A DNA stretch of 63,099 nucleotides, the filler included, from Octopus bimaculoides (Eukaryota): the NCBI RefSeq assembly GCF_001194135.2. It is 6 parts of 6 records of this genome, joined end to end, with 100 filler letters (N's around TTAATTAATTAA, not from the genome) between each part and the next. Parts side by side here need not be neighbours in the genome. Positions count along the whole stretch, not along the records: positions 18,076 to 39,733 come from NC_068981.1; 5 more parts are not named here. One strand, 5' to 3'. The notes under the pieces were generated by a model that saw nothing but the letters and a program-made list of their open reading frames with translations, did no database searches and had not been told where the DNA came from. This document shows positions 38,970 through 39,723 of the stretch, in pieces. The position numbers were made by a program, and so were the translations under genes. How positions within the stretch are numbered: position 1 is the stretch's first letter; each line of letters begins with the position of its first letter.

Positions 38970-39723
38970 TTCTTTGAAACACTTGGAGAGACTACTCTGA
39001 GAGCCAGAAAAAATTCTATCAAGGTATTATATAACATAATATAATTTATAAAGAATATACAATATTTGAAATTATCATCGTTGTTTTATTCCAATCTACA
39101 AGAAAGGAAATTTTGCTATTACAGAAGTGAACAGCTATGATACAAGTAGAACCGACGTACGCTTAGAGTGGATTTCTCTCTCCACAACAGTGACCAGGAG
39201 AAAATGTATAATGCTATGGTAAAAGTAGAGAAAGCAAGCGAAAGGACATATATCGCAGTTTAGATGAATGTCTATCATTGAGATCTACAATAACACTTAG
39301 ACTGGGTGAAACTATAAATTATTAAAAGAATATTATACAAAGTCCTGATTCACTATACAACCGGATGAAAGCTCTTCCGTACAGTTTGGAGTTCCACTTG
39401 TTAATATTTTTAAACCAGTTTCCTGCTGTTTTATGAATAGCATCAAACATAAGCGGCTTTCACAACGGTATATAATGAGCAAATCAAGGAGAGTCGATAT
39501 CATTTAGAAGCAACTCATATTCAGAAACGAGTAAAATATCTTGCTGCTTTAGTGCATTACTGACTTACAACCGTACAGCGCTCATTTTGATTTCTATTTC
39601 ATAGAGAACAAACACCACAGTAAAAATAACGATGGTAAGTAGGCTTTACTTTATAATATCTAGCGAATTTTTGCATTTTACTCCTTAACTATTTGAGTTT
39701 TCTTTCTGAAGTAAAGCGTCAGA
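38970..39723 (+). promoter_or_regulatory. Paralogous IL-17 promoter plus exon 1 (39502-39634, ATG 39632-39634) plus intron start; copy 3, exon 2 not visible
   Basis: TATATAAT at 39469-39476, TCATTT at 39500-39505, ATG|GTAAGT. 39523-39723 matches 25948-26148 with 4 mismatches in 201 bp. Confidence 0.75.

What the first reader, a model, noticed from the sequence alone, without database searches (positions are those of the whole stretch)
38970..39723. Orphan IL-17 promoter and exon 1 with intact TATA, Inr, ATG and donor: a probable second IL-17 gene hidden in a gap
Seen: copy 3 keeps the TATA-Inr spacing (33 bp), the same 133-nt exon and ATG|GTAAGT. I found no CPW/CxC exon downstream in readable sequence. 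It lies 3' of the visible exon 2, so it cannot splice to it in cis. Gaps of ~590 bp (41113-41704), ~475 bp (42555-43029) and ~990 bp (45810-46800) lie at intron-like distances, and the first and last could hold a 510-bp exon. Established: IL-17-like genes are expanded in tandem clusters in octopus.
Basis: partly seen in the sequence, partly recalled or inferred. Interest (0 to 1): 0.72.

Follow-up and report, generated by a model that had tools for sequence, protein, structure and literature searches.

The report
First exon of annotated octopus IL-17 gene
The "orphan" promoter and exon 1 is the normal 5' end of an already annotated, transcribed interleukin-17-like gene of Octopus bimaculoides; its second exon lies 3.3 kb downstream, just past where this piece of sequence was cut, so the finding is ordinary.

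Summary
The sequence features are real: TATATAA at 39469, an Inr-like TCATTT with A+1 at 39502 (33 bp after the TATA start), a 133-nt exon ending in ATG (39632-39634), then GTAAGT. The exon is not orphan. The piece is an exact copy of O. bimaculoides chromosome CM046601.1 (GCA_001194135.2) and ends at an assembly gap 99 bp after the donor. In the chromosome record a 1,299-N gap follows, then readable sequence with a ...TTACAG acceptor and a 510-nt exon. ATG plus that exon translates exactly to XP_052830236.1, "interleukin 17-like protein" (170 aa, Pfam IL17 E=2.9e-12). RNA contigs from two runs of different studies carry the copy-3-specific exon 1 joined to the first bases of that exon 2, a sequence found at no other paralogue fetched. 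The same promoter and exon-1 module heads the neighbouring genes of this tandem cluster, a cluster already described in the literature. So a further IL-17 gene does exist, but it is neither hidden in a gap nor new. Side notes: the middle gene of the piece (exon 1 25927-26059, exon 2 30214-30724) is spliced and expressed but matches no database protein, and copy 1 (19696-20190) is the true relic, with its core promoter and exon 1 deleted.

The parts
38967..39468 (+). Promoter-proximal upstream region of the downstream IL-17-like gene (XP_052830236.1). It is part of the duplicated gene unit.
   Evidence: It is 82% identical to copy 1 (19696-20162) and 78% to copy 2. It is also homologous to the regions upstream of P0001 (L001 8848-10092) and of a minus-strand module in L002.
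39469..39475 (+). TATA box (TATATAA)
   Evidence: Position. The ATATA core is invariant in all 8 paralogous modules.
39500..39506 (+). Initiator-like element TCATTTA, with predicted +1 at A39502
   Evidence: It lies 33 bp after the TATA start. The ATTT core is invariant in 8 of 8 modules. The longest RNA contig starts at 39508. The exact transcription start is inferred, not mapped.
39502..39634 (+). Exon 1, 133 nt: a 130-nt 5' UTR plus the start codon ATG (39632-39634)
   Evidence: RNA contigs cover 39508-39635 (X16) and 39570-39635 (X27) with 0 differences, then continue into exon 2 of P0004. The annotated CDS of P0004 starts at L003 10001, which is window 39632.
39635..39733 (+). First 99 nt of intron 1 (donor GTAAGT at 39635-39640). 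The piece ends here at a 1,299-N assembly gap.
   Evidence: No RNA contig covers anything past 39635.
25893..26059 (+). Copy 2: TATA (25893), +1 (25927) and the 133-nt exon 1 ending in ATG (26057-26059) of the middle IL-17-like gene
   Evidence: RNA contigs join 26059/26060 to 30213/30214.
30214..30724 (+). Exon 2 of the middle IL-17-like gene (signal peptide, IL-17 domain and stop). This is the exon copy 3 cannot use.
   Evidence: The acceptor is ttacag|GAT. The 170-aa product hits Pfam IL17 at E=3e-13. It is covered by RNA contigs of 4 runs.
19696..20190 (+). Copy 1: a relic of the same promoter unit, with the core promoter, exon 1, ATG and donor deleted
   Evidence: The alignment shows a deletion of about 282-298 bp relative to copy 2, roughly 25839/25859 to 26136/26140. 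The junction is confirmed by DNA contigs of 4 runs with 0 differences. No IL-17 exon 2 lies between copy 1 and copy 2.

Best explanation
Window 38967-39733 is the promoter, the 5' exon and the start of intron 1 of an annotated two-exon interleukin-17-like gene of Octopus bimaculoides (XP_052830236.1, 170 aa). A TATA and Inr core promoter starts transcription near 39502. Exon 1 is a 130-nt leader that ends with the start codon. A phase-0 intron begins right after the ATG; it is 3,288 bp as assembled, 1,299 of them N. Exon 2 lies outside the piece and encodes the rest: a hydrophobic signal peptide and the IL-17 cystine-knot domain. The gene is one unit of a head-to-tail tandem array in which each unit carries the same promoter and exon-1 module. 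Shown here: the identity of the locus, the exact gene model, the annotation, the splice junction in RNA, and the IL-17 domain. Inferred: the exact transcription start, promoter function of the TATA and Inr, and secretion and cytokine function of the product.
For: The piece matches CM046601.1 of GCA_001194135.2 exactly: window 18076-21193 equals L001 20146-23263, and window 29632-39733 equals L003 1-10102 with 0 mismatches. The gene called for P0004 spans L003 10001-13801. ATG at L003 10001-10003 (window 39632-39634) plus L003 13292-13801, preceded by TTTATTACAG, translates exactly to P0004. P0004 is XP_052830236.1, 'interleukin 17-like protein [Octopus bimaculoides]', with Pfam IL17 at E=2.9e-12, 47.2 bits against a cutoff of 24. 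Two RNA contigs support the junction: X16 (165 nt, study P7, 2022) and X27 (199 nt, study P12, 2020). Both match copy 3's exon 1 with 0 differences, including the four copy-3-specific bases, and continue after 39635 with ATGTCTCTCAAGTTGTAACCTTTCTCTTCT. That string occurs only at L003 13293-13322 among the loci fetched; the other exon-2 starts read GATCTCTTT or GATCCCTCT. The sister gene behaves the same way: copy 2's exon 1 is joined to 30214 in X26 and X35. The module recurs at 8 places in the 130 kb fetched. Four of them lie 2.6-4.2 kb upstream of an IL-17 exon 2: those of P0002, P0001, the middle gene and P0004. Tandem IL-17 expansion in O. bimaculoides is published: 31 genes in Albertin 2015 and 36 in PMC8353272, which also reports two exons as the commonest structure in mussel IL-17 genes.
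Against: No reads from this exon were found in the roughly 6% sampled of three large 2026 RNA-seq runs, so expression is low or tissue-restricted. The RNA evidence consists of assembled contigs, not single reads, and the two paralogous mRNAs share 42 identical nt across the junction. A k-mer assembler could therefore in principle cross over between them, but all four contigs pair exon 1 and exon 2 in the cis arrangement. The intron contains an unsequenced gap. The 2015 annotation of the same gene (A0A0L8GHC1, 175 aa) used a different N-terminus, MGNLFL....
Confidence: 0.95

Rival explanations
1. Copy 3 is a dead, orphan promoter and exon-1 relic left by a partial duplication, with no exon 2 of its own.
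For: Such relics exist in the same cluster. Copy 1 (19696-20190) lacks a core promoter, exon 1 and any exon 2. One module in L002 has lost ATGGTAAGT and another has ATG changed to AAG. Within the piece, no IL-17 exon follows copy 3.
Against: An intact exon 2 follows at a distance typical of this cluster in the chromosome record, and the spliced product is an annotated protein. RNA contigs from two studies show the junction.
Confidence: 0.02
2. One reading: copy 3 belongs to a previously unseen IL-17 gene whose roughly 510-bp exon 2 is hidden inside an assembly gap.
For: A 1,299-N gap does begin immediately after the piece (L003 10103-11401) and is large enough to hold such an exon.
Against: The transcripts from copy 3 join an exon 2 that lies in readable sequence beyond the gap (L003 13292-13801), and the gene is annotated.
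Confidence: 0.01
3. Exon 1 of copy 3 is also, or mainly, spliced to a different downstream exon, either an unrelated gene or the exon 2 of a more distal paralogue. In that case the annotated model would be only one of its uses.
For: NCBI models of two neighbours (P0002 with a 30-kb gene, P0003 with 222 aa) have long alternative N-termini, so unusual splicing or mis-modelling occurs in this cluster.
Against: Both RNA contigs that carry copy-3 exon 1 go to the proximal exon 2. No other loose end was seen.
Confidence: 0.02

Closest known systems
Octopus bimaculoides interleukin 17-like protein XP_052830236.1 (UniRef A0A0L8GHC1 in the 2015 annotation)
   Same: It is this gene. The annotated CDS starts at the ATG of copy 3 (window 39632-39634), and ATG plus the downstream exon reproduces the protein exactly.
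   Different: Nothing differs in the RefSeq model. The older 175-aa model has another N-terminus, MGNLFL instead of M. The RNA contigs that carry exon 1 show the ATG|GAT junction of the RefSeq model instead.
Tandemly expanded IL-17 gene families of marine molluscs (Albertin et al. 2015; Saco et al. 2021, PMC8353272)
   Same: The genes are tandem and head-to-tail. The two-exon structure here is the one Saco et al. report as commonest in mussel IL-17 genes. They carry the CPW motif and an IL-17 cystine-knot domain.
   Different: The papers describe gene counts and clusters. The shared 5' module (TATA, Inr, 133-nt leader ending in ATG, intron directly after the start codon) was not mentioned in the passages read here.
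The neighbouring paralogue in the same piece (exon 1 25927-26059, exon 2 30214-30724)
   Same: Same architecture, the same 133-nt exon 1, 92.6% nucleotide identity in exon 2, and 128 nt of perfect identity across the exon 1 / intron 1 border. It is also transcribed and spliced.
   Different: Its protein is absent from the protein collections searched, whereas the copy-3 gene is annotated.

Membership tests
Interleukin-17 family (Pfam PF06083) | Significant match to the IL17 domain profile above the curated cutoff | tested here: met
   P0004, the product of copy-3 exon 1 plus its exon 2, scores E=2.9e-12 and 47.2 bits against a cutoff of 24, over residues 86-163 and profile positions 1-81 of 81. 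The middle gene scores E=3e-13 and 50.4 bits.
Interleukin-17 family (Pfam PF06083) | Conserved cysteines of the cystine-knot fold (two CxC pairs) and the invertebrate CPW motif | tested here: met
   Read directly in P0004: STCPWYLK, AVCRCRKC and TACVCA. The CPW motif as an invertebrate signature is stated in PMC8353272. The fold itself was not modelled.
Interleukin-17 family (Pfam PF06083) | Secreted protein with an N-terminal signal peptide | tested here: inconclusive
   The N-terminus MDVSQVVTFLFLNYILIVSSASIPTR is hydrophobic and looks like a signal peptide by eye. No signal-peptide predictor was available.
Interleukin-17 family (Pfam PF06083) | Cytokine activity through an IL-17 receptor (SEFIR-domain receptor) | not testable with these tools
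   This needs an experiment.
Functional RNA polymerase II gene 5' end (as opposed to a relic) | The exon is present in RNA and spliced at the predicted donor to a coding exon in cis | tested here: met
   RNA contigs in X16 and X27 end their match at 39635 and continue with the first bases of the exon 2 at L003 13293-13322.
Functional RNA polymerase II gene 5' end (as opposed to a relic) | Transcription start at the predicted Inr, driven by the TATA box | tested here: inconclusive
   The longest RNA contig begins at 39508, 6 nt after the predicted +1. The TATA and Inr are conserved in all 8 modules. No cap-selected data were available.

The most novel reading that the evidence does not exclude
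The most novel reading still open does not concern copy 3 being orphan. It has two parts. First, the 128-bp perfectly identical tract shared by copy 2 and copy 3 (26021-26148 and 39596-39723) spans the end of exon 1 and the first 89 nt of the intron, while identity upstream is only 56-82%. This may reflect ongoing gene conversion, or a constrained regulatory or splicing element at the 5' end of intron 1, that keeps the leaders of adjacent IL-17 paralogues homogeneous. Second, the middle paralogue is an expressed IL-17 gene missing from the current annotation.
Probability: 0.35. Interest if true: 0.2.

Novelty: already known. Interest (0 to 1): 0.07.

Why it matters
It matters little beyond housekeeping. 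The result removes a false lead: there is no hidden gene and no orphan promoter. It also shows that the finding arose from the piece ending at an assembly gap. It does document the shared 5' module of this octopus IL-17 sub-cluster: TATA, Inr, a 133-nt leader ending in the start codon, and a phase-0 intron directly after the ATG. That module could help correct the mis-modelled N-termini of neighbouring genes and recover the expressed paralogue that has no database protein in the same piece.

Tried and rejected
1. I laid three large 2026 RNA-seq runs (X21-X23) on 38900-39733 and got 0 reads in the roughly 6% sampled. This is uninformative about absence, so the evidence came from older runs' contigs instead.
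2. I tried to lay reads on the downstream locus L003:9600-13900 to see the joint directly. I used the loose ends on the window instead.
3. I tried to lay reads on 25850-30950 in one stretch. I split it into 25860-26160 and 30170-30950.
4. I searched the piece for a second IL-17 exon with tblastn and found only 30214-30724 and its 230-bp assembly duplicate at 29974-30090.
5. I looked up the middle gene's protein by exact sequence and found it on record nowhere.
6. A Pfam scan of four transposon-like ORFs (35067-36008, 36046-36435, 20483-20833 and 21384-21740, all on the minus strand) gave no hit at E<=0.01. Their retroelement nature rests only on motifs read by eye.
7. I considered that the copy 1 deletion might be an assembly error and rejected this, because DNA contigs from four runs span the junction exactly.

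Full report
**What is in the sequence**

- TATATAA at 39469-39475.
- An initiator-like TCATTT at 39500, with A+1 at 39502, 33 bp after the TATA start.
- A 133-nt exon, 39502-39634, whose last three bases are ATG (39632-39634).
- The donor GTAAGT at 39635-39640.
- The copy-3-specific string cagcgctcattttgatttct at 39576-39595.

The piece ends only 99 bases after the donor.

**The three copies**

Self-comparison and alignment show three copies of the unit.
- Copy 2 (25442-26160) has the same layout: TATATAA at 25893, +1 at 25927, a 133-nt exon and ATG at 26057-26059 followed by GTAAGT.
- Copy 1 (19696-20190) shares only the upstream part. Relative to copy 2 it has a deletion of about 282-298 bp that removes the TATA box, all of exon 1, the ATG, the donor and the first ~80 nt of the intron. 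Homology resumes at TAAAGCGTCAGAAT.
- DNA contigs from four runs of several studies span that junction with no differences, so the copy 1 deletion is real and not an assembly error.

**The visible IL-17 gene**

The only IL-17 coding exon in the piece is 30214-30724, with acceptor ttattttattacag|GAT. There is also a 230-bp exact duplicate of its 5' part (29861-30090 = 30101-30330) across a 10-N gap, which looks like unmerged contig ends.

ATG from copy 2 plus this exon gives a 170-aa protein with a hydrophobic N-terminus and a Pfam IL17 domain (E=3e-13). RNA contigs of X26 (728 nt) and X35 (246 nt) join 26059/60 directly to 30213/14, and four runs cover the exon.

Copy 2 therefore belongs to this exon 2.

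**Where the piece comes from**

A protein search returned Octopus IL-17-like proteins. I fetched the loci of the four best O. bimaculoides hits. The piece proved to be an exact copy of chromosome CM046601.1 of assembly GCA_001194135.2, at about 24,987,243-25,008,900:
- Window 18076-21193 equals L001 20146-23263 at 100%.
- Window 29632-39733 equals L003 1-10102 with 0 mismatches.

In the chromosome record the piece's last base is followed by 1,299 N (L003 10103-11401) and then by readable sequence. The piece was therefore cut at an assembly gap.

**What copy 3 belongs to**

The gene called for protein P0004 spans L003 10001-13801. L003 10001-10003 is the ATG of copy 3. L003 13292-13801 is preceded by TTTATTACAG. 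ATG plus that exon translates exactly to P0004.

P0004 is XP_052830236.1, "interleukin 17-like protein [Octopus bimaculoides]". An older 175-aa model of the same gene (A0A0L8GHC1) is in its cluster. P0004 hits Pfam IL17 at E=2.9e-12 and shows CPW and two CxC motifs.

The intron is 3,288 bp as assembled, including the gap.

**Transcript evidence**

Two RNA runs from different studies hold contigs that match copy 3's exon 1 with zero differences, including the four bases that distinguish it from copy 2:
- X16: a 165-nt contig covering 39508-39635.
- X27: a 199-nt contig covering 39570-39635.

Both continue after 39635 with ATGTCTCTCAAGTTGTAACCTTTCTCTTCT. Among all loci fetched this string occurs only at L003 13293-13322, the start of P0004's exon 2. 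The other paralogues begin GATCTCTTT or GATCCCTCT.

There is a caveat. These are assembled contigs, and the two paralogous mRNAs share 42 identical nt across the junction. However, all four contigs (two per gene) pair exon 1 and exon 2 in the cis arrangement.

Three large 2026 RNA runs gave no reads in the ~6% sampled, so expression is probably low or tissue-restricted.

**The cluster**

The core module (TATA through early intron) recurs at 8 places in the ~130 kb fetched. Four of them lie 2.6-4.2 kb upstream of an IL-17 exon 2: those of P0002, P0001, the middle gene and P0004.

In the alignment of the 8 modules, the ATATA core, the Inr core and ACGATG|GTAAGT are conserved. There are two exceptions: one module reads ACGAAG and one has lost ATGGTAAGT.

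Tandem expansion of IL-17 genes in O. bimaculoides is published. Albertin et al. 2015 report 31 genes, and PMC8353272 reports 36 genes in tandem repeats. That paper also reports two exons as the commonest IL-17 gene structure in mussels.

**Mechanism**

Shown here:
- Exon 1 is transcribed and spliced at the predicted donor to an IL-17-encoding exon in cis.
- The start codon is the last codon of exon 1, so the intron is phase 0 directly after the ATG.

Inferred:
- Initiation at about 39502, driven by the TATA and Inr. The contig start at 39508 and conservation across the paralogues support this.
- Secretion and cytokine function of the product.

**Verdict**

Its two interesting claims fail: the exon is not orphan, and exon 2 is not hidden in a gap. 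The gene is already annotated and the family expansion is already published, so the finding is ordinary and scores low.

The side observations are listed separately: an expressed middle paralogue with no database protein, the true relic at copy 1, and a 128-bp perfectly identical tract between copies 2 and 3.

Noticed in passing
window 25927-26059 + 30214-30724: The middle IL-17-like gene (170 aa, Pfam IL17 E=3e-13) is transcribed and correctly spliced in RNA contigs. Its exact protein is absent from the 15-billion-sequence collection, and the best database hit is only 86% identical. It appears to be an expressed paralogue missing from the annotation.
   Followed up: partly
window 29861-30090 and 30101-30330 (also 18190-18592 vs 18603-18996): A 230-bp segment is duplicated at 100% identity on either side of a 10-N gap, and it includes the acceptor and the first 117 nt of exon 2 (family D11). 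A similar ~400-bp pair at 94% identity flanks the 10-N gap at 18593-18602, and its second copy contains a further 10-N gap at 18863-18872. These look like unmerged overlapping contig ends and may be why the middle gene has no protein model.
   Followed up: no
window 19696-20190: Copy 1 of the promoter unit has a deletion of about 282-298 bp that removes the TATA box, exon 1, the ATG and the donor. DNA contigs of four runs confirm it. No IL-17 exon 2 lies between it and copy 2, although an intron-like fragment (22837-23085, similar to 27656-27941) survives. This copy, not copy 3, is the real dead relic of the cluster.
   Followed up: yes
window 26021-26148 vs 39596-39723: Copy 2 and copy 3 are perfectly identical over 128 bp covering the last 39 nt of exon 1 and the first 89 nt of intron 1. 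Identity is 56-82% upstream and 92.6% in exon 2. This suggests gene conversion or a constrained element at the exon 1 / intron 1 border.
   Followed up: partly
L002 36657-36920 and L002 16572-16789 (minus strand): The module 2.6 kb upstream of P0002's exon 2 reads ACGAAG instead of ACGATG. This may explain NCBI's odd 200-aa model spanning 30 kb with a foreign N-terminus. A minus-strand module in L002 has lost ATGGTAAGT altogether.
   Followed up: no
window 35067-36435 (-), 20483-20833 (-), 28363-28656 (+), 21384-21740 (-): There are long ORFs with retroelement-like motifs read by eye, for example YVDD and a possible GIY-YIG-like stretch in 35067-36008. Fragments 20218-20942 and 28272-28970 are inverted copies of each other at 85% identity. 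Pfam gave no hit at E<=0.01, so calling them transposable elements is only a lead.
   Followed up: partly
window 39523-39733 (run X12): One contig of X12 laid on copy 3 carries exactly the four copy-2 bases at 39580, 39586, 39590 and 39595. It is the paralogue (copy 2) cross-mapping at 97% likeness, not a polymorphism of copy 3.
   Followed up: yes
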